A stretch of 64,000 nucleotides of DNA from Macrostomum lignano (lineage: Eukaryota), in assembly GCA_002269645.1 (NCBI GenBank), contig NIVC01001121.1:186001-250000 (forward strand), in the 5' to 3' direction. The translations under genes were made by a program, and so were the position numbers. A model generated the notes under the pieces. It was not told where the DNA came from. It did not search any database and was given only the letters and a program-made list of their open reading frames with translations. Positions 1,156-24,676 of the stretch are shown piece after piece. The first letter of the stretch is position 1. Every line of letters begins with the position of its first letter.

Positions 1156-1198
<43 letters not shown>

Positions 1199-3531: not shown

Positions 3532-4288
3532 GCAACAAAGAAAGGAACTTTTTAATGCTATACATTTAACTTTTGACCTTGTACAGTCGCTATTGTTAGT
3601 TTCGTAAGTAAAATAATGTTTAAATCACTAAGGCATCAGCCCTGAAACAGAGCTGTCTAGCCTACGATATGAACTTGTGAGCTTTGACATCACAGCCTCT
3701 CTTCAAGCCATGGCTTAATCCTTACTCTCCCTTGACATCTCAGCAACTCCCCATATGAGCCTTGACATCTCAGCAACTCCACCATTAGTCTTGACATCTC
3801 ATCTATTCCCGGTGGGTTGTTCGCAGTTGATTGTCTTTTGTGTCTTTGAGTGATACCATAGCTTTGTCGATTGCATCAGCTATTTTCCTGACATTCGTTC
3901 CTATGCACCAGTAGATTTTGTCCTGCTGATCAATGCGACTCGTCTCAGTTGTTTGGCGACAGCTTCTGTCTTATAAAAAATGCATCGAGCAATTTCTTAG
4001 CCACGACACATGTGTACCATCGCCGGAAAAGTTCTGACGGAACAGTGCAAGTTTCATGAAAAGCGATTGAGCCGTTTTTTCTGAAATCAATCACTTACCG
4101 AGATTGGAGATATCAAAAACTTATTTTGTAATTTAGCATTGTGGATTGAACAACTGTGTACATTCCAAAAGTAACTCTGTTAAAAAGAAAAACATGTCCA
4201 CAGCTAATTAAAATCTGTCTTCTAGTGAAGAGTGTACCTGTGCAGATGACGCTGTCTGATATAATCATTTTTAACCCTCCCCCCGCAG

Positions 4289-7200
4289 GGTGCTCCAACT
4301 GCCGAGCAACCAGCTCCCTTTCTTAGAAACAGGTTTCCAAGCTTTTCTCAGCTTCGCAAACGACTCGCCATTCAAAGTCACAGACGGGAACGCCATGGAC
4401 TTGTACATGACTGCCGACTTTTTCCTCTGTCGAGAACTTGGCGCAAAAGTTCTGCAATTTCTTGCCGAGCGCTTCAAACGAGACGTGCATTTTGCTTTGC
4501 ACCTGCTGATGGAGATTGACGAATTCTGGCTGCCTGAGCTGGAAAGAGTTGCCATGGGGGCGGTCTTGAGCAATTTTACTAAAATTTTTGAAGCAACGAA
4601 TTCTCCAGAACAGTGGTTGAAGCTCAGCGCTGATCTGGTGAGAGATGCTATTTATAACACAAGGACTACTTAAGAACTGTGTACAGAAGTTGTTAAGTAG
4701 TCCTTGTTATAACATATGCTCATTTGCTCACTCATTTCATCACCCTGGTGCTAAAGCCACTGGTGCTGAAGCCCCTTGTGCTAAAGCTCCTGGTGCTAAA
4801 GCCCCTGGTGATAAAGCCCCTGGTGCTAAAGCCCCTGGTGCTAAAGCCCATGGTGCTAAAGCCCCTGGTGCTAAAGCCCATGGTGCTAAAGCCCCTGGTG
4901 CTAAAAGCCCCTGGTGCTAAACCCCTGGTGCTAAAGCCCCTTGTGATATAGATTTTTCGGTAAGTCATTTATTCGAGCATTTCCCATTCTCATCCGCAGG
5001 TGCATCGCATACTGAGTCACAACGCTTTGAACTGTCAATCAGAGGAGCAGGTGCTGGCTGCTGCTGCTGGCTGGCTACGCGCCAACCCCGGCCACCAGCG
5101 AGCGGCCGCGCGGCTCTCCGAGTGCGTCCGGTTCGGCCTGCTCGAGCCCGGCCAGAGAGCTCGGCTCAGCATGAGCTATCCGGATCTGATGCGCTGGTCT
5201 CCGCCTCCCTGGTCTGTCGCCATGTTGAATAACTCTGCAACGGGAAAGAGCCGAACTCGGCACTCTGGTGGGGGCGCGGCGAATTCTGTCAACTCGAGGC
5301 CAAGGGAGCCGCACGAGGTGAGACTAGCGCTAGCTGGCTCCCCATTGGGCCATACGCTTTAGAGAAAGCTTTGACAACAATTGCATTGGCCCTGCTTCTT
5401 GACTTTTGACACCCAAAATTTACCCTTGAGCTTTCGACTCGTGGAAGTCGACTCACTTTGAACGTGTCATCACAGCAACCTTTCTGAGCAAACTCAGAAA
5501 TGCACACAGTTAGTGAAGGGGATCGAGGCAAAGACAAAGACAAAGACAAACCGAGTGTGGCGATGGCGAGGCAGCGAAAAGCAGCGAAAATCATGCCACT
5601 CACCGGGAGTCTGATCACGTTCTCTCGCAGCCGCCGTGCCACTGTGACGCGCTTCAGCGAGCTCTGCCTCGAGCTGAGCCTCTCTTTTCTTCAGGTCCAG
5701 CAGCCGAATGCGCAGTTCAGTCTCTCGCAGCTGATCCTCGAAACCGCCTCCCGTCGCCGCCCGACCCTCGGCTGAGGCGCCCACCGCCGGTAGCATCTCG
5801 TCCTCAGGTGGAGCCAGACTTAGCTCGGGTGCGCCCGCATTCGTCGGTGATGTCTTGTCATCTTGAGCACGACGAGATGAGCCTCTGTCCTGCTCCAACG
5901 CCTGCCTCTCAAGCTCCTTGGCAATGCTGAGTTTTAGACGACTTGTTAGCTCTTGCTTATTGCCATTAGTAGGCAGGCCGCGCTCACTAAGGGCTTCTCG
6001 TAGCGCTTTGTTAGTTGCGGGCAGTACAAGGCTATCTGCCATGATTCAGCAAAAAAATTCAAAAATTCAACCGCGAGCAACCCCGTGCAGCCACAAAGGT
6101 GGCGGCCTAAATAGGCACGCGCACGCACAAACGCACCCACCACCCCACCAGACAGCCAGCACCCAAACAGCCCCCCCCCCTTGCACTAACAGCGGTTAGC
6201 CCTCGCGGGCTCGCGCAAACCGATGCAAAAAATACTAAAGAGCGCTAAACACGCTAGTTTTTGAGTTGCTGGAGCTGCAGGATAAAGCAATCTGACGCAC
6301 GATGAGTCGCCGAGTGGCCCTCGTCCGTCCAAGCGACCTGTTGCGCAGTCGGCGACTCCAGCTGGCAGGCCGCATCATCGGCGCCGAGTCGCCTGTCCTG
6401 CCCACAGCCTTCCTTCTCCACTTCCTCAACTAACGGCTAACATTTCTAGAATATTTACGCACCACTATGCAGATTGTGCTCGTGTTCGGCGGCTGGGGTC
6501 AGAGACCTGCGCCCATCGCAGTCGCAGGCAGAGTGGCAGCAGCAGCTACCAACCAATCGGCGCACGACGCCGATAATGCAGCAAACCAGCAGCAACAGCA
6601 GGTGCCGCAGGTTCAGACCGCTACCGGCACAACGGGTCCTCAAGCGGCATGTCAAGTGTACAACCCGCGAGCCGACTGCTGGCTTCTTCGCTGTCCGAAC
6701 AGTGGAAGCAGAAGTAGGACTGGCCACGGTCTTCCATCGAATCACATTGGTCAGCTGGGCGCTCGCGTCTACTCCGGCTGCCTGCTGGTTGACGGAGTCA
6801 TCTACGTCATCGGCGGTTACGACGGTCAGCAGGCGTTGCGGGCTGTGTGGCGCTACAGCCTGCGCCAGCCCGAGCTTGGCTGGCACATCGGCTCCTGTCT
6901 GACGCATAAACGGTACTACGTCAGCTGCGCGGCCACCGAGACGGGCGCGATGTACGCCATCGGCGGCCACTCCGGCGAAGTGGTGGCGCAAGATCAGCGC
7001 GGACTGACTGCCCGGCTTAGCTCCGTTGAACGGCTTCAAGCTGGGGAGAGCGTCTGGATTGAGGTTTGCAGCTGCTAACTGTTGTCTGTAACTTGCTGAA
7101 TGATTGCTGATTGAGTTATTGCGTTTTTCGATACTGCATCCGGAAGGCGTATCTATGTACAAATAGGTGTGCACCAGAGTTTTGCAGGCGTGTTCATGCC

Positions 7201-8064
7201 GAAATTTGCAGCTGGGTTCACGCAGAGCTCTAACCGTGATGTTGATGCTTTTGCTGTCGAATGTTAGGTGAATACAAAAGTCTGAATTTTCTTTACCTCG
7301 ACCCAGGTCGCCAGCCTGCACGTGGTGCGCAGCGACGCCGGCGCCGCAGCCATTGGCGAGAGAGTCTTCGTAGCCGGAGGTTTCGACGGGCAGCGCTACC
7401 ACGACACGGCCGAATTGTACGACCCGGATGTTGACCAGTGGACTCTCATTGGTCGTATGTGCCATCCGCGAAGTGGCGTCGCTCTGGTTGCTATTGGCGA
7501 CGCAGTCTATGCAGTTGGGGGCAACGATGGGGAGAAGAGGCTGCGCTCGATCGAGAAGTACCGACTCGGTGGACTGGACAACGAATGGGTAGAGGTAGGA
7601 CAGGTGAGAGAACAGACTTCTACGCTCGTATGTGATGTAGGTTCAGAATGAGAATGAGAATTGATACCTGTACACAGATGCAGAATGTGAACATGGGCAC
7701 AAACTGTTCACAGATACAGGAAGTGTAAACAGGTACAACACACGCGCGAAGACCACGGCACATTTACGATGCGCATAAATATTTTTTTAGATACAAATGC
7801 AACCCAGTCAGCTGTACCCAATTGCAGATGCTGCAGGCCAAGAGCAACCTGTCGGCCGTGGCCCTGGACGGTGGCACCCGAATTCTGTCCATCGGTGGCT
7901 GGTCGGACGACGGTCAGCCAGGAGTTTTGGCCACCTCCGAGACCTTCTGCTTGTGCAGCGGAGCGTCGAAGCGGACAGCGAATTGCGGCTTCGCAGCGTC
8001 AGCCACGGCTGCCTGCGTGCTCCGGGATCATCAAACTGCTCAGTGGCTTCTGCAGCAGCTATAG
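4289..8064 (+). CDS. BTB-BACK-Kelch (KLHL-type) protein; exons 4289-4637, 5000-5317, 6473-7063, 7307-7603, 7828-8064; first exon not located
   Basis: BTB C-terminal part (LYMTADFFLC..L), BACK (ILSHNALNCQSEEQV..A...W...VRFGLL) and Kelch blades (IVLVFGGW, VIYVIGGYDG, MYAIGGH, VFVAGGFDG, VYAVGGNDG, ILSIGGW). All four inferred GT..AG introns are phase 0 and keep the frame. Confidence 0.88.
4744..4942. repeat. 15-bp minisatellite (gcccctggtgctaaa)n in a Kelch intron
   Basis: About 13 tandem units. Confidence 0.95.
5494..6042 (-). CDS. SAP-domain/coiled-coil ORF nested antisense in a Kelch intron (TE-derived gag-like fragment or exon of a nested gene)
   Basis: NKALREALSERGLPTNGNKQELTSRL fits the SAP consensus and is followed by a coiled coil (EDQLRETELRIRLLDLKKREAQLEAEL). 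ATG at 6042; candidate donor G|GTGAGT at 5603. Confidence 0.55.
   Translation of the reverse strand: MADSLVLPATNKALREALSERGLPTNGNKQELTSRLKLSIAKELERQALEQDRGSSRRAQDDKTSPTNAGAPELSLAPPEDEMLPAVGASAEGRAATGGGFEDQLRETELRIRLLDLKKREAQLEAELAEARHSGTAAARERDQTPGEWHDFRCFSLPRHRHTRFVFVFVFASIPFTNCVHF
6312..6392 (+). mobile_element. Short LINE (RTE/CR1-like) fragment
   Basis: Homologous to the reverse complement of ~8975-9050 (gtccgtccaagcgacctg..gcgc.gtcggcga..ccagctggcaggcc.catcatc). Confidence 0.7.
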
Positions 8065-8478
8065 AGACAGCAACAGGAACCATTGCTCAACTTAACAGTT
8101 TATTGATCTAAGTAATCAAAATTTTAGTGGGTTTTTATTAGTAGTCTAATGTGACGAAAGAAGTTTGCGTTTTGCAATTAAAAATTCATGACTAGAGCAT
8201 TGATTAGGAGGTATATTAATGCCCTTATTTTGAATGCATAAGAGCATATTTCACACAGGTATTCAATATCCCGAAGGAAGATAATAAATTTAATTTCAGA
8301 ATGAAATATATATATATACATTTAAAATAAATTTCTTCTTGATATGCTCTGCGAAGTATGATGATCAAATTCAAAGCTGATGGATTTTTGCCTCGGTATT
8401 TTGTTAACACCCGAAAGGTTTTGACGTTTTGAGATCAAGTTATTCAGCTTCCGCAGTTATTTTGTACTGCATCGTCGC

Positions 8479-8747: not shown

Positions 8748-8748
8748 C

Positions 8749-8783
<35 letters not shown>

Positions 8784-9220
8784 AAGAATACGCAGTTAGC
8801 GTCACAGGGCGCGCTTCAAGGCCAGGTCGCGAATGAACGCCACGCCGCCGGCCGAATCCGGGACGCCGGCGTCAGCCAGCAGGCAGTCGACGAAACGCCG
8901 AGTGCGCGCCTGCCCCTGCCAGTAGGGTGCCTGCAGCGTTAGCAGCAGCACCTCCTGCACCGGCTCTGGGCAGTACGACTCAGCGCGGATGATGTGGCCT
9001 GCCAGCTGGGGTCGCCGACGGCGCAGCAGGTCGCTTGGACGGACCAGGCCGGCGCGGAGATACTAAAGCCGCGTTGGTCACTCGCTCGTAGCCGATCTTG
9101 AAGGCGGCGCGCAGCAGGCCAGCGTGCACCGCGTCAACTTGCTGCTCGAGCGACTCCGTCAGCGTCCAGGTCTCGGCGTTGTACAGCAGGACGGTATCGA
9201 TCACCGCCTGGAACAACGCC
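8748..9220 (-). mobile_element. 5'-truncated LINE (RTE/CR1/L2-like RT C-terminus) with (TTG)n tail
   Basis: FQAVIDTVLLYNAETWTL...RRRRxQLAGHIIR (with a frameshift), a stop codon, then a (TTG)n tail seen as (CAA)n at 8748-8783. Confidence 0.85.
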
Positions 9221-10557
9221 GCCCGAATGCTAAAAAATTGACCAACACTGTCAGTCTTAAAGACAATTCAACTTGAAGATACCAAAATAATTGACAGATT
9301 TTATATTTATCTCAAAGTTTCAGTCTCAAACTTAATATTTTTACCATATACCGGTACACGTTGAGTAGTTAGAGGAGCACTATTATGGTTGCATGGATGC
9401 ATAAGGCACGTACATCTAGGCTTTACAATAAGTAAAACACGGAACCAGTACTCAAACTTCGGTATCACCTGGGACGTAAGAGCCAAAAGAGACCTTGGGA
9501 TTCAATAAAAAGAAGTGACAATCATTTTAGTCCACAAACTTGGACTCATCAAAGAAGCATGCGTTTCGTTGAAATTATGTGGAAATGGCACTCTTATGAG
9601 CAGGTTCGAACTGTTAGGATACATTTTCATAACATTGTTTTCCATGGGTCTAAAATAAAACTTGCGCGTATTAATAAATATTTGACATACAGAGGGTTGC
9701 TACAATCCACATCGGTAGCCAGAATTGCCGTAAAAATTTTCTAAACGTACGTGCATTTTGATTTCAGTTTCAGTGTTGTTACAATTCTGAAACTTTAAAT
9801 ATAATATCCGTAAGAACCCTAAAATTTTATTTTATCTTTCAGATTCATATTTCAAGCCAAGCAAAAAGTCCCTGTTTCAAGGAGTGGCCACTCGTAGAAA
9901 GTTAAGCCTCAAACTTTGTTATAATGATTATGTTTTTAGATATTGACATTTGATAGCTGCATAGTTTTTATATATTTGATATACGCAAGTTTAAAATGGT
10001 TACACTTAAGATTGCAAGCAGGAAAAACAGAACCAGTTCTCGCAAATCGGGATTTTTACAATAGCTACACATTTGCAGTAGTTATAGCAATTCTCATGGG
10101 CTTGAAATCATGCTGTACGTATATGTGGATTTAAAAATTGTGTGTCTCTGATGATAGATAATAAGCATTATAGTCGTGATCACCTGGGAAATACGAGTCT
10201 AAAGGGTATTAAGAATTTTCTAAGAACAAACGCTCCGATTCAAAAAAGTAAACAATAAAAATGCTTACACAATGTAGCAAATCAAATTCGAGATTGTGAC
10301 GGTTAAGTTAATATATGCTCGATGTACATTGAAGAAAAGCGCGTTGTACTGTGCAATTATGTCAAATGAACATGTGTATGAATGTGCCTGTGTATGAATG
10401 TGAATTTTACGACATAATGAGTGCTCCAATAGGCTTGTCGTGAATATCAGATTCCTAGAGACGGTCATTTACAAAATTAAGTAAATAAAAAAGCACGTCC
10501 TCGAGTCTCAGCCTCTGCATCAGCGACTGTCTCAGAGCCATCGCGTTGCTCCAGCGA

Positions 10558-12225
10558 TTAAGCGGAGGCTTCTTGCGGTGTGGCAACTGCTGCTTCGTCC
10601 GAAGCCGAGCGGCAGCGAGCGCAGCGCCTGCGGAGCCACACAGACAGCACGACAATTCCGGCGATGCCCAATATGATGCCAACGAGGGCCGCGATACCTG
10701 CCGGAGACGGAGAGGCGGACTCCGAAGTGGACTCCTGAGCAGAGCTGTAGGGCGCCGATTCGGCATCAGAACTGCTGCTGCTGCTGCTGTTGTAGCTGCT
10801 GCTACTGTCGATTGAGCTGGTTTCGTCATCGCTCGAAGCTGAGCCGAAGAAGCCGAGGAAGCGCCACACGTGCTGTGTGATATTAAAGGACCAACGCCAG
10901 CCGTGATGTTTCACGACAGTGACGGGATGCTCGACCAACTCATAGTCGGGCTCCTCGAATGGCGGGCGCCTCACTTGAATCTGGGCGAGCCCGGAGCGAC
11001 CTTTCACGCACTGCATGATTGCGCAGCCGTCGACCGTGTCCAGAGTCACTTGGCTGAATTCTTTCGGGCAGTGCTTCGGCGCATCCAGACCTCCGCTTGT
11101 CTCCGACAGCGGGTTGCCCGAGTCGCAGGAAAAGAACCCGGCGAACGGGATTCTGCCGCGAGAAGCCCTGCTCAGGTCCATACTCAGGCACAGGTAGATG
11201 TCGCGTCCGACCTTGTAGGGCCGGAAGTGCTCCGGACACTCTTTGCTCTGCGTGATGTCGTTGAGGAATCGTCCGTCCGCAGCGTAGGCGCCTGCGTAGA
11301 ACATGCCGGGGTTGGAGATCAGCTTCGAAGTGCGACGAGCAGTGCACCAGTAGGCAGTCAGGACGGTGTACGAGTCGACGCATTGGGTTCGCTCTTCGTG
11401 GTGAACGCACCAGATAAACCAGGAAGTGCAATGCTTCGTCTTCCAGCAGCGCTTGCTGTTGCGGCCAACGGTCGAAAGAAGCTTCACCTGGAAAAGCAAC
11501 ACTTTACGGATCGTTAAGTAGCCTGAAACGGTCCGCTGGTAGGACAGAGTGTTATTGTGAAGCAGAAAGTTGTACCCTACACTTAAATCGAACTACTCGT
11601 AAGTACAAATGTAGCTAGATTTACTCGAGGGGCCGTAGCCCAGTGGTGCCCAGCGCGGCGCTCTGATGTGCCAGCGGCCTGGGCTCGATTCCAAGTGCAG
11701 TCGCATTAACTTAGGGCTAAATTGGAATCTCGGCTTGGGTCTGCTCGAGCAATAAACACCCTTGAGGGCCAACCTCCAAGGCAAAATGAAGTGTACAGGC
11801 CTAACAATAAATAAAGTTTGGGCCGCTGTACACTCCTGTGCTGTGCGTATGACTTCATATGTATGATGCGCTTGTGTGCTTGCTCAGGGGAGTCGGCGGA
11901 ATGGGCAGTAATGCCGCCTCTCTTAAAGTGAGCCAGGGTGCACACAACCCTCTGCCTCTAACTGAAAAAGCTAAATTTACTCACCGGCTCATACCCAACT
12001 GGACACCTGGTCCCGCCCGTGATGGGGTTGAGCAGAACGCCGCTGCCTGCACCGGAGCACAGGTTGAAGCCCGCGCGGGGGTTCGACTCCCAGCACTGCT
12101 GATAGACGCCAGCGAAGCTGAAGTTGGTGCCAGGAGCCTCGCACTGGCCGGCTGTATTGGCGATGGGGTCAAAGTTTCTCGAATTCGGGTCCAGACAGCC
12201 CTTGACGGTGTTGGCCTTGTAGTAG
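10558..12225 (-). pseudogene. MPEG1: Inverted partial MPEG1 copy (last two exons only, no MACPF)
   Basis: Reverse complement of 12930-14597; the breakpoint lies in the intron upstream of the YYKANT exon. Confidence 0.85.
11627..11968 (+). mobile_element. tRNA-derived SINE (mirror copy in the left arm)
   Basis: GGGGCCGTAGCCCAGTGG (A box) ... GGCTCGATTCC (B box-like), about 330 bp. Confidence 0.85.
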
Positions 12226-12296
12226 CTGAAATCAGTCATGGCAAACCTTCTTTTGAGCAGCATTCTTTTGAGCATGCTTGAAAAGCTTCTCATTCG

Positions 12297-14597
12297 AGCT
12301 TCAACCAGACTTCAAGCTGTCTGCAGCGCTCACCAATCGCTTGACGGAAGTGATGAACGCGCTGGTGAACAATCAAACAAAGCTGGCTCGATACCTGTCC
12401 GATCTAATCGTCCGGGACTTCGGAACCCACGTGATCACCTCTGTAGAGGCTGGAGGCATTCTTGAAAAGCTGGACTTCTTTAATTCTCGTTCCATCGACG
12501 ACTCGAACTTCATGCAGAACAAGTTTTCAGCAGCAGCAAGCTTCAGCTTTCTTCGTTTTTTCAGCTCCAATATTAGCATCGGTGTTTCCGTGACGAATGA
12601 AGAAGTCACCAAGTACAAGAATAGCATTCGCAAAATGATTTTACGAACTTCGGGCGGACCAGTCCTTGGTTCGAACCCGAAGCTGGACGACTGGATCAAG
12701 TCTTTACACGAGAATCTGGTGCCGATCGATCGCAATGGCGAGCCGCTGTACAGCGTGGTCAACAGGCGCTCCCTTCCGAACCTGCCCATGACGCACATGT
12801 TGAAGCTGCGGAAGGAGATCGAGGATGCCGTAATGCGGTAAGTATTACCGAGCATCTACGAATGAGAAGCTTTTCAAGCATGCTCAAAAGAATGCTGCTC
12901 AAAAGAAGGTTTGCCATGACTGATTTCAGCTACTACAAGGCCAACACCGTCAAGGGCTGTCTGGACCCGAATTCGAGAAACTTTGACCCCATCGCCAATA
13001 CAGCCGGCCAGTGCGAGGCTCCTGGCACCAACTTCAGCTTCGCTGGCGTCTATCAGCAGTGCTGGGAGTCGAACCCCCGCGCGGGCTTCAACCTGTGCTC
13101 CGGTGCAGGCAGCGGCGTTCTGCTCAACCCCATCACGGGCGGGACCAGGTGTCCAGTTGGGTATGAGCCGGTGAGTAAATTTAGCTTTTTCAGTTAGAGG
13201 CAGAGGGTTGTGTGCACCCTGGCTCACTTTAAGAGAGGCGGCATTACTGCCCATTCCGCCGACTCCCCTGAGCAAGCACACAAGCGCATCATACATATGA
13301 AGTCATACGCACAGCACAGGAGTGTACAGCGGCCCAAACTTTATTTATTGTTAGGCCTGTACACTTCATTTTGCCTTGGAGGTTGGCCCTCAAGGGTGTT
13401 TATTGCTCGAGCAGACCCAAGCCGAGATTCCAATTTAGCCCTAAGTTAATGCGACTGCACTTGGAATCGAGCCCAGGCCGCTGGCACATCAGAGCGCCGC
13501 GCTGGGCACCACTGGGCTACGGCCCCTCGAGTAAATCTAGCTACATTTGTACTTACGAGTAGTTCGATTTAAGTGTAGGGTACAACTTTCTGCTTCACAA
13601 TAACACTCTGTCCTACCAGCGGACCGTTTCAGGCTACTTAACGATCCGTAAAGTGTTGCTTTTCCAGGTGAAGCTTCTTTCGACCGTTGGCCGCAACAGC
13701 AAGCGCTGCTGGAAGACGAAGCATTGCACTTCCTGGTTTATCTGGTGCGTTCACCACGAAGAGCGAACCCAATGCGTCGACTCGTACACCGTCCTGACTG
13801 CCTACTGGTGCACTGCTCGTCGCACTTCGAAGCTGATCTCCAACCCCGGCATGTTCTACGCAGGCGCCTACGCTGCGGACGGACGATTCCTCAACGACAT
13901 CACGCAGAGCAAAGAGTGTCCGGAGCACTTCCGGCCCTACAAGGTCGGACGCGACATCTACCTGTGCCTGAGTATGGACCTGAGCAGGGCTTCTCGCGGC
14001 AGAATCCCGTTCGCCGGGTTCTTTTCCTGCGACTCGGGCAACCCGCTGTCGGAGACAAGCGGAGGTCTGGATGCGCCGAAGCACTGCCCGAAAGAATTCA
14101 GCCAAGTGACTCTGGACACGGTCGACGGCTGCGCAATCATGCAGTGCGTGAAAGGTCGCTCCGGGCTCGCCCAGATTCAAGTGAGGCGCCCGCCATTCGA
14201 GGAGCCCGACTATGAGTTGGTCGAGCATCCCGTCACTGTCGTGAAACATCACGGCTGGCGTTGGTCCTTTAATATCACACAGCACGTGTGGCGCTTCCTC
14301 GGCTTCTTCGGCTCAGCTTCGAGCGATGACGAAACCAGCTCAATCGACAGTAGCAGCAGCTACAACAGCAGCAGCAGCAGCAGTTCTGATGCCGAATCGG
14401 CGCCCTACAGCTCTGCTCAGGAGTCCACTTCGGAGTCCGCCTCTCCGTCTCCGGCAGGTATCGCGGCCCTCGTTGGCATCATATTGGGCATCGCCGGAAT
14501 TGTCGTGCTGTCTGTGTGGCTCCGCAGGCGCTGCGCTCGCTGCCGCTCGGCTTCGGACGAAGCAGCAGTTGCCACACCGCAAGAAGCCTCCGCTTAA
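12297..14597 (+). pseudogene. MPEG1: MPEG1-like paralog B, 5'-truncated (exons 12297-12837, 12930-13170, 13668-14597)
   Basis: MACPF second half (LQPDFKL..ALTNRL...LVNNQTKLARYLSDLIVRDFGTHVITSVEAGG...SGG...LVPIDRNGEPL) spliced via CG|GTAAGT..ttcag|C to YYKANT, then P2, TM and a short tail. The start, signal peptide and N-terminal MACPF are replaced by the inverted arm. Confidence 0.85.
13187..13528 (-). mobile_element. tRNA-derived SINE in the MPEG1 paralog B intron, 14-bp TSD
   Basis: A/B boxes; TSD GAGTAAAT(T/C)TAGCT at 13173-13186 and 13529-13542; absent from the orthologous 90-bp intron of paralog A. Confidence 0.85.
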
Positions 14598-15597
14598 TCG
14601 CTGGAGCAACGCGATGGCTCTGAGACAGTCGCTGATGCAGAGGCTGAGACTCGAGGACGTGCTTTTTTATTTACTTAATTTTGTAAATGACCGTCTCTAG
14701 GAATCTGATATTCACGACAAGCCTATTGGAGCACTCATTATGTCGTAAAATTCACATTCATACACAGGCACATTCATACACATGTTCATTTGACATAATT
14801 GCACAGTACAACGCGCTTTTCTTCAATGTACATCGAGCATATATTAACTTAACCGTCACAATCTCGAATTTGATTTGCTACATTGTGTAAGCATTTTTAT
14901 TGTTTACTTTTTTGAATCGGAGCGTTTGTTCTTAGAAAATTCTTAATACCCTTTAGACTCGTATTTCCCAGGTGATCACGACTATACTGCTTGTTATCTA
15001 TCATCAGACACACAATTTTTAAACCTACATATACGTACAGCATGATTTCAAGCCCATGAGAATTGCTATAACTACTGCAAATGTGTATTGTAAAAATCCC
15101 GATTTGCGAGAACTGGTTCTGTTTTTCCTGCTTGCAATCTTAAGTGTAACCATTTTAAACTTGCGTATATCAAATATATAAAAACTATGCAGCTATCAAA
15201 TGTCAATATCTAAAAACATAATCATTATAACAAAGTTTGAGGCCTAACTAAATTCTATTCTCTAAATCCTTACAAGACACATCATAAACCCATCAAAACG
15301 CAGTCCCCATCACAAATTTTATAGAGAATGTGATTTTTAAGGTTTGTGATAACGCCCCCTTCGTTTCTGTTATCGATCGCTACATCTCCTCCCCCTCTCT
15401 CTGGCCTCTCATTCTCCTCTGCTAAGCTTTCGTGTTGCATATTATTTCAGCTTCCGTTTCGGCTTCTAACTCTGATTCATTCTCATGCACAGAATATTCG
15501 TTTTCACGAATCTTGCAAAGCCAAGTCAGATGTTCTTCATCAGAACTCTCTTCTTCCGATTTTTATTTATTTTTTCTGGCGTGGCTTCCCTTGCTTG

Positions 15598-16241
15598 TAG
15601 GGGTCAAAATCCCGGGATCCCGGGATTCACTGGGTCGGGATTCAATCCCGGATAGTTAATGCTATGTTTTTATAATGTCTGATAAAATAACAATTAGCAA
15701 GACAGTTAGGTAAAATATGGAACATACATGCATCCATGTCCACTCTCCGTTGCACACTTTGCAAAATCTTTGATGTTTGAGTTCAGTCTTGTTTAAATAA
15801 TTTAAGGTTGTTTTTAAATTTTGAACTTATCGTGCATGTCGTGACAACCTTGACAACGTGAATGCCCACTGCCTAGACAGTAGTATGTTGTGATTGTGAA
15901 TGTAATGTATACATTCATATTGCTTTGCACAGTGGTACATGTACATTACATTATTTAATATATGTTATACATAAAATATATGCATATTACAATATTGATA
16001 TTACGAGTAGTAATATACTACTATAATATTTGCTATACTACAAGTATAATAACATCACTGTTATAATATTATATATTACATTACCAGCCTAGCATTTCCC
16101 CTTTAGCTCCGACCAAAACTGTAAGCCTTATAAAAATGTCAGTCACAGCATTTTAATGACATTGTAACAATGTTACGACAAGGATGGTACTGGGAAATAT
16201 CAATCCCGGGATTGACAGAATACGGGATTTTGTGACCCCTA
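15598..16241. mobile_element. Non-autonomous hAT-type MITE with 8-bp TSD
   Basis: TIRs TAGGGGTC(AC)AAAATCCCG at both ends; flanks CTTGCTTG (15590-15597) and CTTGCTTA (16242-16249); AT-rich interior; interrupts the gypsy integrase tail. Confidence 0.8.
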
Positions 16242-17142
16242 CTTGCTTACTACTGATTGTTCTACCTTCTGCTGATTTTCCTTACTTAGATGCTTAGCTT
16301 TCTTCCGGCTTTTCTTATTTGTAACTTCTGTTACGAGTATCTCAGCGCTCTCCTGGCTTCCCTTATCTATTGGTTCTTTCACTGTCACAGAATTTGGCAC
16401 TGGCGCTATATTATCCCTATGCACTAATAACTTATTACCTACTAATTCGCCTTCTTCTTTCTGAATCTTAAAAACAACTTCTGAGATTTGCTTTAGCACT
16501 CTAAAAGCGGCTCTCTTTTTCCTATGGAACTTATTAGATTCATAAATGTTAAGCTGTGGATTATTAAATAACACTAAGCTTCCTACTTCGATAATTTTTT
16601 GCTTTTTCTGACTTTCGGCGGCGGTTCGTCGTTTGTTCTGCACCTTTCTCAAATTTTTCCTTTACTAATTTCCTAGCACTTTTTAATCTCTCTGCTGCAT
16701 GCTCGGAAACATAAGTTGGATAATTAGAATATTGCTTTGGCTCTCTGATCTCACTGTCTATGGGCAGAACCGTCTCTCTGCCAAATAATAAGTGCGGCGA
16801 ATAACCTGTAGTCTGATTAACACTGGTTCTAACTGCGACTAGGGCGGCTGGAATTAACAGGTCCCAATTGCTGTGATCCTTTTCAATTAGACACGTGACT
16901 ATCGATTTCACTTGTTTATTCAATCTTTTTACTAAACCATTGCTTTGAGGGTGTGAAGAGTTTGATCGGGTGGTGATCAGTCACCCGAAAACTGCCACTT
17001 CCAGACGTTAAGCCTGGGAACAAAATCCAGTGATCACTTTCCGGTGCGGGCTCCTCTTCTTTGTCGGGCGGGTTCTCCGAGCTCGTTTCTTAAAGGATTC
17101 TTCCTCCGGAGTAGTCTTCTTGAACTCTACAATCGGCCGAAT

Positions 17143-17510
17143 TTTTTTTTTTATTAGAGGCAGGGGGGTTGTGTGCACCCTGGCGCACTTTAAGCGACAT
17201 AGGCACACAACCGGCGAGAAGCATTACTGCCCATTCCGCCGACTCCCCTGAGCAGGCATACAAGCGCGCGGATACGTACGCAGGCACACACTCACACAGG
17301 AGTGTACAGCGGCCCTAACTTTATATTATCGTTAGGCATGTACACTTCACTGCGCCTTGGGGGGTTGGCTCTCAAGGCCGTTAATTGCACGAGCAGAGCC
17401 AAGCCGAGATTCCAATTCAGCCCCAAATTAATGTGACTGCACTTGGAATCGAGCCTGGGTCGCTGGCACACCAGAGCAGCTGCGCTACCGCTGGGCTACG
17501 GCCCCCCTTA
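17143..17510 (-). mobile_element. tRNA-derived SINE with poly-A tail and perfect 14-bp TSD
   Basis: Same family as 13187-13528; tail CTCTAAT(A)n; TSD ACAATCGGCCGAAT at 17129-17142 and 17511-17524. Confidence 0.92.
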
Positions 17511-19303
17511 ACAATCGGCCGAATGTGAGAGCGTAACAATTTACTCCGTCGACGTCGAAGTATCCTCGAGTGCCGAAATCAATATGTTCCCCGAGTGCGG
17601 AAATTCAGAATCAACGATGCGCCCTAATAACAAAGTCAACTCTATAACAATGACGAGGTCCTCTAGAAAAGGCGTCTTCTTCTAGAAATAACGGAATCGG
17701 AGTCGTGTGCTCCTATCGGTTACTCTAGGGTATCAAAATCAATCAAATCAATAATCCTCTAAGGGTATTGGAATCGGTCCACAGATCCTATCCAATCCCT
17801 TAGGAAAAGGGAGGCCTCAAATTCAATAGACTCAGTAAAATTAACTGAGCAGTAACGGCCGGCAATAACAATCGCTCTCAATAATCAAAATAACGAAGAC
17901 TTGAACAAAGCTTACCAATTGGTGTTTCTCTTCCTCAGAGATGTAGCCTCGTTTGGCTGCTCTTAGAAAGCCCAAGATCTTTGGAGGCTGCTCCGAGTCT
18001 GAGATTTCAGCTCGGGTTTTGCGTTTATATTTATACACAATTTGTCGGCCTTGAGTCGACCTTGAGCTCAAAACCGGTTTTTTGATGAGTTCACGAAAGG
18101 AATTTTATTATTTGACAGGTGGGTTTTTTTGATAGAAGTGGGTGAGACTTGGGTCACATTCAGGTTAACATTGACCATATTTGGAAGTTCTAGAAATAGA
18201 TGTTGAGAACCGGTTTTTCGGACAATAGCATAGCCACTCGCTGTTTGCGTGATGCTATTGGCATTACTAAAAACAGAGTATGACGCATAGCTATTTTTAA
18301 ATTTGTGTTCATAATTTTATCTTACTACTTCTAGTAGGCTACCATGTTTGGAGATCTCTACATGTAATATTGAGTTGTGAAAGTGTGCTTCACGTTGTAC
18401 AATTCACAGAATGCACTAAACTGCTTGTTAGTGAATGCTTTGCCGTTATCTGTATGGATCCAATGACATTGGCCACATTCACTAAACACTCTTTCTTGCA
18501 ATAGCTTAACAATTGTGTAGGCTTTTTGATTGAGCATCGGAAATGCAAATGGATACCGGGTATTGCTGTCTACTGTTGTCAGCACATACTGATGACCCCT
18601 ATTTGTAGCTAATCTATGTGTAATTGGTGAAACAGCTCACTAATTGGAAATTACTGAATCGGAGCTTGCACTTTATGACCTCTTTTACTCTCTAGGCGAT
18701 GCACTCTGCCTCTGCCACATGCTTCTCTACTGCAGCTACTAGGCCTGGTCTCCATTAAATCTCCATCGAACACGCTGAACTGCTTTATCTCTACCTAGCG
18801 GGCTATCATGCAGATCGCTAAACACTAGCTTATCTAAAGACTTAGGCATCTAAAGACTTAGGCAAAACAATTTTCCAGGTTCCTTCTTCTTCTATGTCAA
18901 CAGATTCCTTTCTAATTTCATCTTCTAATATTTTCGGCTTAACTGCTTCATTTCAACTGACTCATTTTTCTGAACTGGTGGGACTGACAGATTTTCTTGC
19001 TTCCACTCTATTAGTGTGTAGATTGCTGTATCTTCCCTTTGAGCTTTAACAATTTGCTCTCTCTTCAATGGTACTTGCAAGAAGTCAGTTGGCAATTTTT
19101 CAACTTTAGTGGTCAGGCTCAGTGTCTCTATTTTGTTGCTTTAAGCTTGAACTCGGTGCTGACACGTGCTACCATCACACCTTCTACTCCTGAAATGACT
19201 AGTGACTCGTTCCTAGATTCTGGGTCAACTGGATGCGGAGTCTGCATCTCACTTTCTCCTTCCTCTACTCTCTCGCCTACTGCAGCATTCACGCTGTCTC
19301 TCG

Positions 19304-20072
19304 GCTTCACGCCTTTTTCAATTTCACAGGCTTTCACGCCTTTTTCACTTTTACAGGCTTTCACGCCTTTTTCACTTTCACAGGCTTTCACGCCTTTTCA
19401 CTTTCACAGGCTTTCACGCCTTTTTCACTTTCACAGGCTTTCACGCCTTTTCACTTTCACAGGCTTTCACACCTTTTTCAATTTCACAGGCTTTCACGCA
19501 TTTTTCACTTTCACAGGCTTTCACGCCTTTTTCACTTTCACAGGCTTTCACGCCTTTTTCACTTCCACAGGCTTTCACGCCTTTTTCACTTTCACAGGCT
19601 TTCACGCCTTTTTCAATTTCACAGGCTTTCACGCCTTTTTCACTTTCACAGGCTTTCACGCCTTTTTCAATTTCACAGGCTTTCACGCATTTTTCAATTT
19701 CACAGGCTTTCACGCCTTTTTCACTTTCACAGGCTTTCACGCCTTTTTCAATTTCACAGGCTTTCACAAATTTTTCACTTTCACAGGCTTTCACGCCTTT
19801 TTAACTTTCACAGGCTTTCACGCCTTTTTCAATTTCACAGGCTTTCACGCCTTTTCACTTTCACAGGCTTTCACGCCTTTTTCACTTTCACAGGCTTTCA
19901 CGCCTTTTTCACTTTCACAGGCTTTCACGCCTTTTTCACTTTCACAGGCTTTCACGCCTTTTTCAATTTCACAGGCTTTCACGCCTTTTTCACTTTCACA
20001 GGCTTTCACGCCCTTTTCACTTTCACAGGCTTTCACGCCTTGCTCTGTTTCACTTTCACAGGCTTTCACGCC
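19304..20072. repeat. 27-bp minisatellite (KACE(S/I)EKGV on the pol strand) inside the degenerate gypsy pol
   Basis: About 28 units of tttcacaggctttcacgcctttttcac with 26-bp variants, lying between RNase H and integrase. Confidence 0.95.
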
Positions 20073-23000
20073 ATTCCTAATCTCGGTTGCTTCAGCTACT
20101 TCTGCCGGTCTTCTGGACAAACTGTCCGCGTTAGAGTGTTTTGCACCGCTTCTATGTTCGATATCGAATTGGAATTCGTTCAGCCGCTACCCAACATCCT
20201 AGAATCCCTTGGGCCTGTGTTTGCCTTGACAACCATGAAATCGCCTAATGATCAGTGCGCTAAAAATCGCTTTCCTATCAGATAAAATCTGAAATGCCTA
20301 CTAATGTCTACTAACGCTAGTAACTCTTTTCTAGTTATCTGGATACCGCTTTTCTGATTCCTTCATAGCATGACTGAAATATGCTATAGGCCTCTCGATG
20401 CCATCTGACTGGATTTGGCCTAGGCAGGCCCCTATGCGTCCATCACTAGCATCAGTGTCTAAGACCATTCTAACATTTTCATCGTCTACAAATTCTGGAT
20501 AGGCTAATACTTCTGTTGACATCATTCTACTATTAAGCTCCTCAAATGCTTTATCATGAGCTCTAGTCCACTTTGCCTTAGTTTCAGTCCGGGATTATAA
20601 TTAGTCTTTGAAATACCTCTTTGAGGTGTTCTAAATGATCTTCAAATTGTTTAGAATAGGTCACGATGTCATCTATGTATGCTGAATGCTTGCCAATACC
20701 AAATTCATTAGTCTTTTAAAGGTACCTGAGGCATTAGATAAGCCCCGAGCCATGACTTGGTACTCAAATTGACCTCTCGTTAATGTTGAAAATGCAGTCA
20801 TAAACTTGTGTTCCTCTTTCATCGGAACTTGCCAATAACCAGAATTTAGATCAAGGTTACTAAAGTAATGACTGCCTGTCAGATGCGAAGATGTCTCTTG
20901 AATGTTTAGGTCAGTTGCCATCTTTCTTGGCTACTATCACTAAAGGTGTTGAATAAGTCGAATAGCATGGCCCAATTAGATTTTTGGCTAACATGTCATC
21001 TAACTGAGCATCCACCTGTTTCTGAAGATGGGGGGATCCTTCTAGTCGAAATCCTAACAGGTGTCTCATCTTTTAATGAGATCTCATGCGTGACTAATGC
21101 TGTTAAGCCCATATCTGGATCATGTTGTGAGAAGGCCTCTCTATGCTCTTGTACGGGCTGAATCACTTCTTCTCTCTGTTCTGCTGTCAAGTTTTCACTA
21201 ATATCCATTTCGCTAATCCAAGTTTCACTTGTATAGATTGCGCTTGATTGACATGTCCGGTGATTGGCTGGTTCAGAACGGTTTGATCTACGTCACTGGT
21301 CATGTAGGTGAGCTCTCTGGGTCTCATTGGCTTAGCTAGACCTACTAATGACGATTTCGGCGACTTCAATACTACTTCCAATAGTCTCAATAGTCATTGG
21401 CGTGCCATAATTAGCTTCTGAATTTTTTGCTAATCTCACTGGGATTCGCAGTGCGCTATTAGGCGGAACAACTGCTCTCTCCTGAGTATACACTCGGCAA
21501 ACTCTCACTGGCAAATGAGTATACTGCATGGGGATACAAGTCCCCTCTTTTAAAATTAACATGCCTTTGGCTAAATGGGTGCTTTCACAGCGCTCCTTAA
21601 AGAATTCCATGCCTAATATATGATCGCAATCCTGACTGCACAATACTAATTCAATTTCTATCTCTAGATCTCGAACTGCACTAAAGTACTTGCTTCTCCA
21701 TCTAATTTCATTCACTGTAGTCCCATCAAATGTGGAGATTCTCCTAGTGGTTTCTCTAATCTGATTCGGTTTGAAAAACTTCGACCAAACTGATCTACTC
21801 AGAAAATTATTTTGAGCGCCTGTGTCTATTAGGAAGTCTACTTCTTGGTTTTCGATATTGCCTACTACTACTGCTTCATAGCCTGTTTGCAAGGACAACT
21901 TAAGTAGGACGCTACACTCGAAGTCGATGGTAAATGTTTTGAAGGCAACTTTTCGCCGAAAAATACACTGCAGAGATAGGAGGTTTTAATTTTTTCAGCA
22001 CAAAATTTGTTGTTGCTTTTGATAGGAGGCAGATCCAGTGTTCATCTTTTGATATGTTGTGTCCTTCTTATTGCTCTATCGATACTCATAAAGCTTTTCG
22101 TTCAGAAATAGTTTTGAAGGCAGGTTTCACCGGGAAAATACACTACTGAGATAGGAAATGTCACGATTTTCAACACTAAAACAGTGATTGGGTCTCTTAA
22201 CAGTGTCAGAGAAAGTTCTAATCACACTAGTCTGTGCCTCACATGCTGCTCTAACGACGCATTAATCGATTTTTCATGTTAAATTGGTCTGTCACTAGGA
22301 AAAATGTTTAAAATAATGACAAGATTTACAGTTTGTTTCGGTTTCAGTTTTACAGTTTGGCTGGTGCAGACGCAATTGATGCTGTCGCAGTATAAGTAGG
22401 TATTGGTGCTGGTGCAAACGCATTATTTGCAGGCACACCAAGCATGTGTCTTCTTCGCATTGGGACTGTTCGCCAACCTTCTGAATCTACACTCTATATT
22501 TACAATTAGAGGCCTTCACTTCACATTCACTTCTCCTAGAGGGTCGTGGCCTCGCATGCCGCCCTCCGTTTCCCTGTTTGCGATTCACCTGGCACTGGTG
22601 ACCTATTCCAGGCCTCATCGAGCCGCGGGGTGCTAGCAAATTGCACACCTTCCTGGCTGCGGCTGACAATATGCCGGCACTCTCAGCTGAAACCCCGGTT
22701 GCTCTGAGCTGGGCATGGCTGAGGTCTCGCCACAGATGGTGGCTTATGCGCCATCAGCTTCTTCTGCTGCTCTAGCTCACTCTTCTGCTGCTGAACTAAA
22801 TCTTGGAGCTTCTTCTCTTGCTCGCCTTCTCCCTCTTTCATCATTATAACACCTCCTTTGTGCGATAGTTGCCATGCGGCCTCAATTCGCCTTAGCATTC
22901 GTCTATAGCCTCGACTCATCTCTTCCTTGCATGCGGCCTCTAAACTCTTCTCTAAACTCTTCTCTAAACTCTGACGCATTTCCTATTCTTACCAAATCTT

Positions 23001-24676
23001 TCAATCAAGTGCAGCTCCTTGAATTCGTCATACCCTAGATCTTCTGGCAGATTGAGTTGCTGTACAGCAGCGAATGCTGTTGCTAAGTCAAAGTTGGCTA
23101 ACAATTCTGTTTTCTTATGGTTCTCCTCAATTCCTTCTGATTCACACCTCTGATCGAAAGCTGTCAACCAGATTCTAATGTCTTGACTTGGTGTGTACTT
23201 CTGGATTCTCCCATGCCTCGCCGGTCCTATTTCTAAACGATTCCTAAGTTCTTTGGCTAAAAGCGCTAGTGCGTCATTAACTCCTGCCATTTTTCACTTA
23301 TCTAATTTGCTTTCCGCTGGTTTCTTGATCCCACCGCTGCCACCAAGTTGTAGCAGGTGTAATTTTACTTATTTGTTTTATCTTACAATCTTTCACTAAG
23401 TTGTTATAGGCCTCTTCTTTTTGCCTAATTAAATTCGTACTGTCTGTCACTAAGCTATGAAAACTTCCTAATTCATTCGATTTCTTAGAAATCTCGCAGT
23501 AGCGATTAGTGCCCGAGCGGTAAGACACTGTTCTAAATTCCTAACTAAGTCCGAAATTATAGCGTTCTCCGGGGAACAAGGATGTCCAGCATCAGCTTCT
23601 TAGCTTCCTAATGCCTACTATTACTGTGCGTTAGCCTGTGCGTTTCCTTAATATGCCTATTCTGGGTCTCCTTGACCTCAGTTTCCCCATTCTAGCAAAG
23701 AACTAACAACTTAAGTCTCTTTAGCAGAGATTTCGTTTAGGCTAAAAGTCTATAGCTAAGTAAGAAGATCGGAACCGATAGCAAAGGTTGAGTTTATGAT
23801 AATATTCAATAAAAAAACCTAGAAACTAGCTGATTGGTTGGGGTGAATAAAATACGAATCTAGCTACTAGTAGTAATATAGTTTGAAAAGACCCTGCCTC
23901 TATTTTTCTCTCTGCATTTCTCGATAGATGCTGGCGAATTGCGATCTAAGCTGTGCTTCTAGACATTCAGCAGTACAGCTTAGGCTGCCACTGAAGTGAA
24001 CATAAAAAAACTGGGCATCGGGTGCTAAAAATTTGACCAAAACTGCCACTTTTAAAGATTATTCCACCTAAAGGTACCAAAATAATTGACAGATAATTTA
24101 GGAACCATGCATGCAGTAATTACAAATATTTGTCATCATGGGAAGTCAGCTATAGAGTCTGAGAATCATTTCAGTGCTCATAACAGTGCGCATTTTTAGT
24201 TCATTTTAACAAAAAAACACGTTCTTTCTTTAATGAGCCTAAAATGTGTAAAGATGTCAGCGGATATTGACAAGGACCACTAGAAGTCATCGAGTTATAT
24301 CGTCACGTCGTGATACACCGGTAGCTTCTAGTTGTCCTTGATATTGGCATGGACAGGGCCTCTGGCTGTGCTGCAATCTTTAAAAACAACCCCACTAGCT
24401 AGCCCTCTTCCAAACATCTTTGCTTCGATTGAGACAGGCTGCGAGAGATCAGGAATTGGATGCTTGAATATTAAATTTTAGTGTGACCGATTTTGTCACT
24501 CAGTTGTATTTTGCCGACACTAATTAGAGAGTCGAGCTGCAGACTGTTGCAATAACAAGAAATTGCAATATACTCAACTATATCTTGGTTTTTTGAGATG
24601 ATCTTAACTGAGAAAATAATCTTCTTCCAGCGTCACAGGGCGCGCCTCTCAAGAAACAGCGGTTGCCGTCATTCAG

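What the first reader, a model, noticed from the sequence alone, without database searches (positions are those of the whole stretch)
9900..15249. MPEG1 gene folded into a 2.4-kb-arm palindrome: candidate hairpin-RNA locus
A foldback inversion copied the last two exons, introns, SINE and 3' flank of paralog B into head-to-head orientation. The 5' half of the gene is gone and half a MACPF exon is left as the 562-bp loop; the junction shows TCG microhomology. Neither copy can encode a full perforin. Any transcript crossing the centre would form ~2 kb of perfect dsRNA complementary to MPEG1 family mRNAs. By analogy with Drosophila hpRNA/endo-siRNA loci, this could be a gene-derived silencer of a toxic immune gene family (inference).
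Basis: partly seen in the sequence, partly recalled or inferred. Interest (0 to 1): 0.8.

Follow-up and report, generated by a model that had tools for sequence, protein, structure and literature searches.

The report
Centre-deleted palindrome of flatworm MPEG1 genes
The 2.4-kb-arm palindrome is really in the assembly, but it is what one 4.5-kb central deletion left of an older, larger palindrome holding two complete head-to-head perforin-like (MPEG1) genes in the flatworm Macrostomum lignano; it is most likely a dead gene remnant, not a shown hairpin-RNA silencer.

Summary
Arms 9900-12296 and 12859-15249 align over 2397 nt with 5 mismatches and 2 indels, all in the outer 270 bp. The 562-nt loop is the 3' part of the MACPF exon.

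The proposed origin is not supported. The window is Macrostomum lignano (Mlig_3_7), a neopolyploid. Two sister contigs (C833, C2244; about 98-99% identical) carry a larger palindrome with base-identical outer boundaries. It has 4.2-kb arms, each holding a complete four-exon MPEG1-like gene (annotated Mlig003757 g1-g4), and a 1.5-kb LINE-derived spacer.

The window copy differs by one 4492-bp asymmetric central deletion. This removed both promoters, both first exons, all of the left exon 2 and the first 344 nt of the right exon 2. Only 12296|12297 is a novel junction.

Arms group by contig rather than by side (18 sites against 1), and the spacer is flipped between C833 and C2244. Both point to arm-to-arm recombination.

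A transcript across the centre would form a 2128-bp perfect duplex. However, no native promoter remains, no protein is annotated from the arms, and nothing could be tested for transcription or small RNAs. The most likely reading is post-polyploid loss of a gene pair. The hairpin-RNA role stays speculative (about 7%). An assembly artefact for the deletion is not excluded (about 20%).

The parts
9900..12296 (-). Left arm: inverted 3' part of the MPEG1-like gene B. Contains 3' flank 9900-10557, exon 4 10558-11487, intron 3 11488-11984 (interspersed repeat 11629-11914), exon 3 11985-12225 and the intron-2 remnant 12226-12296.
   Evidence: arm alignment; ORFs and exon coordinates; exon 3+4 ORF of 389 aa is intact.
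12296..12297 (.). The only novel junction. It joins the equivalents of C833 positions 18399 and 22892, a 4492-bp deletion. TTCG lies on both sides, with one A missing.
12297..12858 (+). Loop: 3' 542 nt of exon 2 (second half of the MACPF domain, with the FGTHVITSVEAGG motif) ending at the GTAAGT donor at 12839, plus 20 nt of intron 2. It is 100% identical to both C2244 copies and has 1 mismatch to the C833 copies.
   Evidence: the MACPF domain assignment is from then on the full-length copy P0004.
12859..15249 (+). Right arm: rest of intron 2 (12859-12929), exon 3 (12930-13170), intron 3 (13171-13667, repeat 13241-13526), exon 4 (13668-14597 with stop; transmembrane segment and tail) and 3' flank to 15249.
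121..1585 (+). Last two exons of paralog A (121-361 and 452-1585). The 5' exons lie just upstream of the window. The gene is intact (809 aa) and 72% identical in protein to gene B.
4275..8111 (+). Kelch-repeat gene upstream of the left arm, on the + strand. It is the only obvious source of read-through transcription into the palindrome from the left. Its last coding ORF ends about 1.8 kb before position 9900.
   Evidence: Kelch_1, E = 2e-14.
16239..23293 (-). LTR-retrotransposon-like fragments on the minus strand to the right of the right arm (weak sub-threshold integrase C-terminal match, aspartyl protease). A possible read-through source from the right. Part of it is absent from C833 and C2244.

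Best explanation
The locus is a derived, internally deleted copy of an older palindrome.

Ancestral state. It is kept in two sister subgenome contigs of the neopolyploid flatworm Macrostomum lignano. It is a ~9.9-kb inverted duplication with two 4.2-kb arms. Each arm holds a complete four-exon MPEG1/perforin-2-like gene (signal peptide, MACPF domain, C-terminal domain, transmembrane segment, tail). The genes lie head to head around a 1.5-kb spacer made of a LINE endonuclease/reverse-transcriptase fragment.

Maintenance. The arms are kept nearly identical within each chromosome copy by arm-to-arm gene conversion, and a crossover between arms has flipped the spacer.

The window's copy. One asymmetric deletion of about 4.49 kb across the centre removed the spacer, both promoters, both first exons, all of the left exon 2 and the first 344 nt of the right exon 2. 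This left 2.4-kb arms around a 562-nt loop.

Consequence. This chromosome copy has lost its gene pair, which is ordinary gene loss after polyploidy, here through the known instability of palindrome centres. The remnant has no demonstrated function.

Shown: the structure, the comparison with the sister copies, the single junction, and the concerted evolution of the arms. Inferred: that the deletion is biological rather than an assembly error, and that the remnant is inert.
For:: contigs C833 and C2244 are colinear with the window across paralog A, the Kelch gene, both flanks and both arms (about 98-99% identity).

C833 arms are 15994-20179 / 21674-25859 (4186 bp, 1 mismatch) with a 1494-bp spacer. 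C2244 arms are 4196 bp (99.6% identical) with a 1488-bp spacer.

the outer boundaries are base-identical in all three contigs, and the loop maps to C833 22892-23453.

a single junction (12296|12297) explains the window structure.

each long arm carries exon 1 (ATG, signal peptide) through exon 4.

these copies are annotated as BOX15_Mlig003757 g1-g4.

MACPF domain in gene B; LINE endonuclease and reverse transcriptase in the spacer.

18 substitution sites are contig-specific yet shared by both arms, against 1 orthologous-arm site. The tree pairs the two arms of C833 (support 99) and of C2244 (100); the two window arms are neighbours on the tree but are not resolved as a pair (78).

the spacer is inverted relative to the flanks between C833 and C2244.

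the organism is M. lignano, assembly Mlig_3_7, with three subgenomes 1.4-2.4% apart (PMC5730564, PMC10733133).

no protein is annotated from the window's arms.
Against: No reads could be examined, so the deletion rests on one contig consensus.

The left part of the locus is present on four contigs. PMC10733133 reports that most 4-copy blocks in this assembly have only 3-fold read coverage and that 36% of the assembly by length is chimeric between subgenomes.

The window's flanks are identical to C833 for 1.5 to 3 kb, while its inner arms carry states shared with C2244. This mosaic could reflect real homeologous exchange or a mixed consensus.

The older ML2 assembly contains two identical intact proteins whose exon 3-4 sequence is of the window type (P0004).

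Pilon polishing with multi-mapping reads could exaggerate the identity between arms.

Nothing excludes low-level read-through transcription.
Confidence: 0.66

Rival explanations
1. Hairpin-RNA (endo-siRNA) locus. Read-through from the upstream Kelch gene (+ strand) or from the retroelement on the right (- strand) produces an RNA that folds into a ~2.4-kb duplex. Dicer-2 dices it, and the siRNAs silence the intact Mlig003757 copies on the sister chromosomes and, weakly, other MPEG1 paralogs.
For:: the modelled transcript of 9900-15249 folds at -5270 kcal/mol with 2388 arm-to-arm pairs and a 2128-bp perfect helix.

1350 perfect 21-mers are shared with gene B mRNA.

(PMC5594548): M. lignano has Dicer-2, 13 Ago paralogs and 4 RdRPs.

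On the + strand, such a transcript would end at the right copy's own 3' end.
Against: Both native promoters and first exons are deleted.

No gene model is on record here although the intact copies are annotated.

The nearest upstream coding ORF on the + strand ends about 1.8 kb away.

Only 33 21-mers match paralog A.

No expression or small-RNA data could be reached.

The structure is fully explained as a by-product of a deletion.
Confidence: 0.07
2. The deletion is an assembly artefact. The window-type chromosome really carries the full 4.2-kb-arm palindrome, and contig C1121 took the junction from a chimeric or mis-trimmed long read or from a mixed-subgenome consensus.
For: (PMC10733133): most 4-copy blocks are over-represented in this assembly, and many scaffolds are chimeric.

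the window's similarity to C833 and C2244 is mosaic.

ML2 has two identical intact proteins with window-type exons 3-4.

homopolymer indel errors clearly exist nearby. The C833 'frameshift' is in frame in ML2.
Against: The junction joins two points 4.5 kb apart within the same locus, next to a TTCG match. Random ligation chimeras would join unrelated loci, and overlap mis-joins need far longer similarity.

C1121 is a 304-kb contig with its own haplotype: about 90% identity to C833 at window 3730-5509, a 7.8-kb indel and a variant private to both of its arms.

Assembly coverage was 130x PacBio.
Confidence: 0.2
3. One reading: a primary fold-back inversion of the 3' half of a single-copy gene, with the 5' half lost in the same event.
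For: The window alone is compatible with it.
Against: It needs the outer boundary of an independent event to coincide, to the base, with that of the larger palindromes in two sister contigs. The deletion model needs one junction; this model needs two.
Confidence: 0.02

Closest known systems
Gene-bearing palindromes kept alike by arm-to-arm gene conversion (primate X/Y ampliconic palindromes; my own knowledge, not tested against a paper here)
   Same: Long, nearly identical inverted arms around a unique spacer, with genes in the arms. Arms are more alike within a chromosome copy than the same arm is between copies. The spacer orientation is flipped between copies. Partial deletions occur.
   Different: Much smaller (4.2-kb arms against tens of kb to Mb). 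Autosomal, in a hermaphrodite flatworm. Carries an immune effector gene rather than testis genes. The comparison is between subgenomes of a neopolyploid, not between species.
Drosophila hpRNA loci and mouse-oocyte inverted-repeat pseudogene endo-siRNA loci
   Same: An inverted duplication of part of a protein-coding gene, able to fold into a long duplex complementary to the parent gene. Such loci are born from their targets (PMC10317233).
   Different: The defining signatures could not be tested: Dicer-2-dependent small RNAs, a primary transcript with defined ends, and target derepression. The arms are about ten times longer than the ~200-bp arm-to-target homology reported for hp-ODox1 in the Drosophila paper I read. 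No promoter is evident.
Central deletions of long palindromes (replication slippage or hairpin processing; 'centre-break' events in transgene palindromes; my own knowledge)
   Same: An asymmetric deletion spanning the symmetry centre, with a junction at very short homology. It leaves a smaller palindrome with a new spacer.
   Different: Here it is seen as a fixed difference between natural chromosome copies. The resulting spacer (562 nt) is shorter than the old one (1.5 kb), so the deletion did not obviously stabilise the structure.
MPEG1 / perforin-2 gene family expansions in invertebrates
   Same: A tandem cluster of MACPF genes. PMC10781884 counts 13 MPEG1 genes in M. lignano. The best named hits are mollusc and vertebrate MPEG1 at 31-38% identity.
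   Different: These genes have four exons, whereas vertebrate MPEG1 is intronless (my own knowledge). The palindromic pair arrangement has not been described in the papers I could search.

Membership tests
MPEG1 / perforin-2 (MACPF pore-forming proteins) | MACPF domain | tested here: met
   Pfam PF01823, E = 1.7e-23, residues 138-349 of the full-length gene B protein P0004. The window's loop encodes its second half.
MPEG1 / perforin-2 (MACPF pore-forming proteins) | MACPF signature (Y/W/F)-G-T-H-x7-G-G; N-terminal signal peptide; single C-terminal transmembrane segment and short tail | tested here: met
   Read directly from the translations. FGTHVITSVEAGG is in the loop. MQLPLVLSILAGLCCC is at the N-terminus in C833 and C2244. 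AGIAALVGIILGIAGIVVLSVWL followed by RRR is in exon 4. No dedicated predictor was run.
MPEG1 / perforin-2 (MACPF pore-forming proteins) | Closest named relatives are MPEG1 over most of the length | tested here: met
   outside M. lignano the best hits are 'macrophage-expressed gene 1 protein(-like)' from molluscs, echinoderms and vertebrates, at 31-38% identity and 63-96% coverage.
hpRNA / endo-siRNA hairpin locus | Long inverted repeat able to form an intramolecular duplex | tested here: met
   (2128-bp perfect helix in the modelled RNA).
hpRNA / endo-siRNA hairpin locus | [quoted passage not shown] | tested here: inconclusive
   Native promoters and first exons are absent. No gene model from the arms is on record. 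No RNA data could be reached.
hpRNA / endo-siRNA hairpin locus | Dicer-2/Ago2-dependent 21-22-nt small RNAs from the arms but not the loop | not testable with these tools
   No small-RNA data are available. The machinery exists in the species (PMC5594548).
hpRNA / endo-siRNA hairpin locus | Antisense complementarity to, and repression of, a target gene | tested here: inconclusive
   Complementarity is met: 1350 perfect 21-mers against gene B mRNA and 33 against paralog A. Repression is not testable.
Gene-converting palindrome | Arm-to-arm identity higher than identity of the same arm between chromosome copies | tested here: met
   There are 0-1 differences per 4.2 kb within C833, against 24-27 per 2.4 kb between C833 and C2244. 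18 sites support grouping by contig against 1 by arm; bootstrap support is 99 and 100. Caveat: polishing with multi-mapping reads could inflate this.
Gene-converting palindrome | Unique spacer that can invert through crossover between the arms | tested here: met
   the spacers of C833 and C2244 are 99.4% identical but in opposite orientation relative to their flanks.
   The outer boundaries are shared to the base with two sister contigs that carry longer arms. Only one junction is private to the window.

The most novel reading that the evidence does not exclude
The centre deletion turned a divergent pair of immune-effector genes into a promoterless perfect hairpin. Read-through transcription then makes it a newborn hpRNA whose siRNAs (possibly amplified by the species' RdRPs) silence the intact homeologous copies. 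This would be an RNAi route to dosage reduction or subgenome dominance after polyploidy, and the first gene-derived hpRNA in a flatworm.
Probability: 0.05. Interest if true: 0.7.

Novelty: new member of a known kind. Interest (0 to 1): 0.27.

Why it matters
As it stands, this is an example of how a duplicated immune gene pair is lost from one chromosome copy of a young polyploid. It also shows that small gene-bearing palindromes in a flatworm behave like the well-known sex-chromosome palindromes of primates: concerted evolution, spacer flipping and centre deletion.

It is a warning for annotation. The 'frameshifts' in the sister copies are at least partly homopolymer errors, so the intact pairs are probably functional genes.

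It would matter more only if the remnant were shown to be transcribed and diced. It would then capture the birth of a hairpin-RNA gene from a simple deletion.

Tried and rejected
1. Independent support for the junction. I looked up the junction-spanning ORF and the intact ML2 protein P0004 in the contig index. Nothing was on record, and the tool notes that records of the window's own genome, or of one very near it, may be left out.

2. The 'SINE' label. An Rfam scan and a tRNA scan of 8000-18000 gave nothing relevant, only a sub-threshold chance hit. The element is high-copy, but its class is unresolved.

3. A fourth, more diverged contig (C118, about 95% identity) as the pre-duplication state. 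It carries paralog A and the Kelch gene, but colinearity stops at window 8320 and it has no gene B. It is therefore uninformative about how the palindrome arose.

4. Reading the frameshifts in C833 (exon 4) and C2244 (exon 3) as proof that all copies are pseudogenes. I rejected this for C833 because the ML2 protein P0123 is in frame there (C4 called as C3). It remains open for C2244, where ML2 protein P0124 shows the same shift.

5. Deciding which arm is the original from LINE continuity. This is not possible, because the spacer is flipped between the sister contigs.

6. Bacterial-style promoter and terminator scans were not run, as they are meaningless for this animal genome.
Full report
**1. 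The observation**

The inverted repeat is real in the assembled sequence and sits at the stated coordinates. Arms 9900-12296 and 12859-15249 align over 2397 columns at 99.54% identity, with 5 mismatches and two indels. The 562-nt loop is 12297-12858. Every difference lies within 270 bp of the outer ends. The inner 2128 bp are perfectly complementary. This is far beyond chance.

The loop is the 3' 542 nt of a MACPF exon read on the + strand. It ends at a GTAAGT donor at 12839 and is followed by 20 nt of intron. The right arm continues with:
- the rest of that 91-nt intron;
- exon 3 (12930-13170);
- a 497-nt intron containing an interspersed repeat;
- exon 4 (13668-14597);
- 650 nt of 3' flank.

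The left arm is the mirror image. Both arm copies keep an open exon 3+4 reading frame of 389 codons.

**2. Where the window comes from**

The window is contig C1121:186001-250000 of a 764-Mb, 5269-contig genome. Protein hits identify it as Macrostomum lignano, and the size, contig count and BOX15 locus tags fit assembly Mlig_3_7. That assembly was built with Canu from 130x PacBio data and polished with Pilon (PMC5730564). The species is a neopolyploid whose inbred DV1 line holds three subgenomes about 1.4-2.4% apart. About 70% of the assembly is in three copies (PMC10733133).

**3. The sister copies change the interpretation**

Contigs C833 (+) and C2244 (-) are colinear with the window through paralog A, the Kelch gene, both flanks and both arms. 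In both, the palindrome is larger:
- C833 has arms 15994-20179 and 21674-25859 (4186 bp, one mismatch) around a 1494-bp spacer.
- C2244 has 4196-bp arms (99.6% identical) around a 1488-bp spacer.

The outer boundaries are identical to the base in all three contigs.

Each long arm carries a complete gene:
- exon 1 with ATG and signal peptide (MQLPLVLSILAGLCCC...);
- a 107-nt intron;
- the 886-nt MACPF exon;
- exons 3 and 4.

NCBI annotates these four copies as BOX15_Mlig003757 g1-g4. The spacer and the inner few hundred bases of the arms are a LINE fragment with endonuclease and reverse-transcriptase domains.

Relative to C833, the window lacks positions 18400-22891 (4492 bp). That is the inner 1780 bp of the left arm, the whole spacer and the inner 1218 bp of the right arm. 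One junction (12296|12297) therefore explains the window. The loop's right edge is only the mirror of the left breakpoint.

At the junction, TTCG occurs on both sides, but one A of the right-hand 'TTCGAAGC' is missing. It is either a blunt join or a 4-nt microhomology plus an AA-to-A homopolymer miscall.

I reject it.

**4. The palindrome behaves as a recombining unit**

I compared the six arm copies over the shared 2.4 kb. At 18 substitution sites the state is contig-specific but shared by both arms. At 16 sites the two arms of one contig differ. One site, 5 bp from the outer boundary, keeps the same left/right difference in two contigs.

A maximum-likelihood tree pairs the two arms of C833 (support 99) and of C2244 (100). 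The window's two arms sit next to each other.

The spacers of C833 and C2244 are 99.4% identical but in opposite orientation relative to their flanks. This is the expected product of a crossover between arms.

These features argue that the palindrome is a genuine, old genomic structure rather than a missed-adapter artefact. Such an artefact would have no spacer and would end a contig.

One caveat: 93% of short-read pairs map to several loci in this genome (PMC10733133). Pilon polishing could therefore exaggerate the identity between arms.

**5. Are the genes alive?**

Paralog A, whose last two exons open the window, is intact (809 aa). Gene B is 72% identical to it in protein.

In Mlig_3_7, both C833 copies carry a 1-nt deletion in exon 4 and both C2244 copies carry one in a C5 run of exon 3. 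The older ML2 assembly informs this:
- P0123 gives a C833-type protein that is in frame ('SKLIPNPG'), so the C833 shift is probably a C4-to-C3 miscall.
- P0124 shows the same shift as C2244.
- P0004, present twice, is an intact protein whose exons 3-4 match the window type.

I therefore do not treat the sister copies as proven pseudogenes. In the window contig, neither copy can make a perforin.

**6. The hairpin-RNA idea**

The physical part holds. A modelled RNA of 9900-15249 folds at -5270 kcal/mol with 2388 arm-to-arm pairs and a 2128-bp uninterrupted helix. The species has Dicer-2, many Argonautes and RdRPs (PMC5594548).

Several points weaken the idea:
- The deletion removed both native promoters and first exons.
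- The nearest + strand coding ORF (the Kelch gene) ends about 1.8 kb upstream.
- To the right lie retroelement fragments on the minus strand.
- No protein from these arms is on record, while the four intact copies are.
- No transcript or small-RNA data could be reached.

Perfect 21-mers are shared mostly with gene B itself (1350) and barely with paralog A (33, confined to exon 3). The natural target would be the homeologous Mlig003757 copies, not 'paralog A'.

The accepted signatures of hpRNA loci are Dicer-2-dependent small RNAs, a primary transcript with defined ends that rises in dcr-2 mutants, and target derepression (PMC10317233). All are untested here.

**7. Could the deletion be an assembly error?**

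Points for an error:
- The left part of the locus is on four contigs, including C118 at about 95% identity, which lacks gene B.
- The literature says most 4-copy blocks are over-represented and many scaffolds are chimeric.
- The window is identical to C833 in the flanks next to the arms, yet shares most inner-arm states with C2244.
- ML2 has two intact window-type proteins.

Points against an error:
- The junction is local, joining points 4.5 kb apart in the same locus, next to a short match. Random chimeras would not look like this.
- C1121 is a long contig with its own haplotype: about 90% identity to C833 at window 3730-5509 and a 7.8-kb indel.
- It has a variant private to both of its arms.

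I put the artefact at about 20%.

**8. Verdict**

The structural description is right. The origin is different from the one proposed, and the function is unsupported.

The most likely account is loss of one subgenome's MPEG1 gene pair through a central deletion of a gene-converting palindrome. That is a new example of known phenomena and is of modest interest. The hairpin-RNA reading is not excluded, and existing public reads could test it directly.

Noticed in passing
L019 2180-3673 (C833 20180-21673) versus C2244 77496-78983: The 1.5-kb LINE-derived spacer of the large palindrome is 99.4% identical between the two sister contigs but inverted relative to the flanks. This indicates a crossover between the arms.
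   Followed up: yes
C833 arms (exon 4) and C2244 arms (exon 3); the equivalent window positions, about 13145 and 13840, are intact: Single-base deletions at C runs truncate all four annotated Mlig003757 proteins (531 and 431 aa). The C833 one is in frame in the older ML2 assembly, so at least part of this is homopolymer error in Mlig_3_7.
   Followed up: partly
window 14700-equivalent flanks and arms; C833 14700-28700: Mosaic similarity. The window has 0 mismatches to C833 in 1.5 kb of left flank and about 3 kb of right flank, but about 10 differences per 2.4-kb arm, and at most of these the window carries the C2244 state. C833 and C2244 differ by only 1-2 bases in the inner 1.8 kb of the arms, against about 3% at the outer arm ends and flanks. 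This is either homeologous exchange or a mixed consensus.
   Followed up: partly
G000:C118:125155-135145 (L025, L027): A fourth, more diverged copy (about 95% identity) of paralog A plus the Kelch gene. Colinearity ends at window 8320 and there is no gene B, so this stretch is a 4-copy block in a genome described as three subgenomes.
   Followed up: partly
L023 (C1121 176001-186000) and window 1-1585: A tandem cluster of further MPEG1-like genes upstream. It includes paralog A (intact, 809 aa), another on the + strand (L023 5742-7919; annotated Mlig012544) and one on the minus strand (C1121 178537-179421).
   Followed up: partly
window 29377-32939 and 43833-46668: A second, larger inverted structure. 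Arrays of a 20-bp satellite (CCACACCCTGCTGGCCTTCC, about 87 and about 68 copies) plus a 63-bp repeat lie in inverted orientation about 11 kb apart, at 89-98% identity, with extreme GC skew.
   Followed up: no
window 2311-2757, 19306-20072, 50208-52072, 54796-55718, 56146-58907, 59436-62018: Many short-period tandem arrays (17-27 bp units, up to 138 copies). This fits the reported 15% simple/tandem repeat content of this genome. The 20-bp array at 2311-2757 is greatly expanded in C118.
   Followed up: no
window 24731-25309 (-): An ORF with a fibrinogen C-terminal domain (Pfam PF00147, E = 6e-32). This is another candidate innate-immunity gene next to the MPEG1 cluster.
   Followed up: partly
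window 8748-9224 and 15598-16200: Young high-copy interspersed repeats flank the palindrome: about 475 bp at 93-97% identity on dozens of contigs, and about 600 bp at 82-92% identity. Neither lies at the arm boundaries.
   Followed up: no
window 20907-28682: A 7.8-kb stretch, including retroelement protease/gag-like ORFs and the fibrinogen-domain ORF, that is present in the window but absent from the colinear C833 sequence.
   Followed up: no
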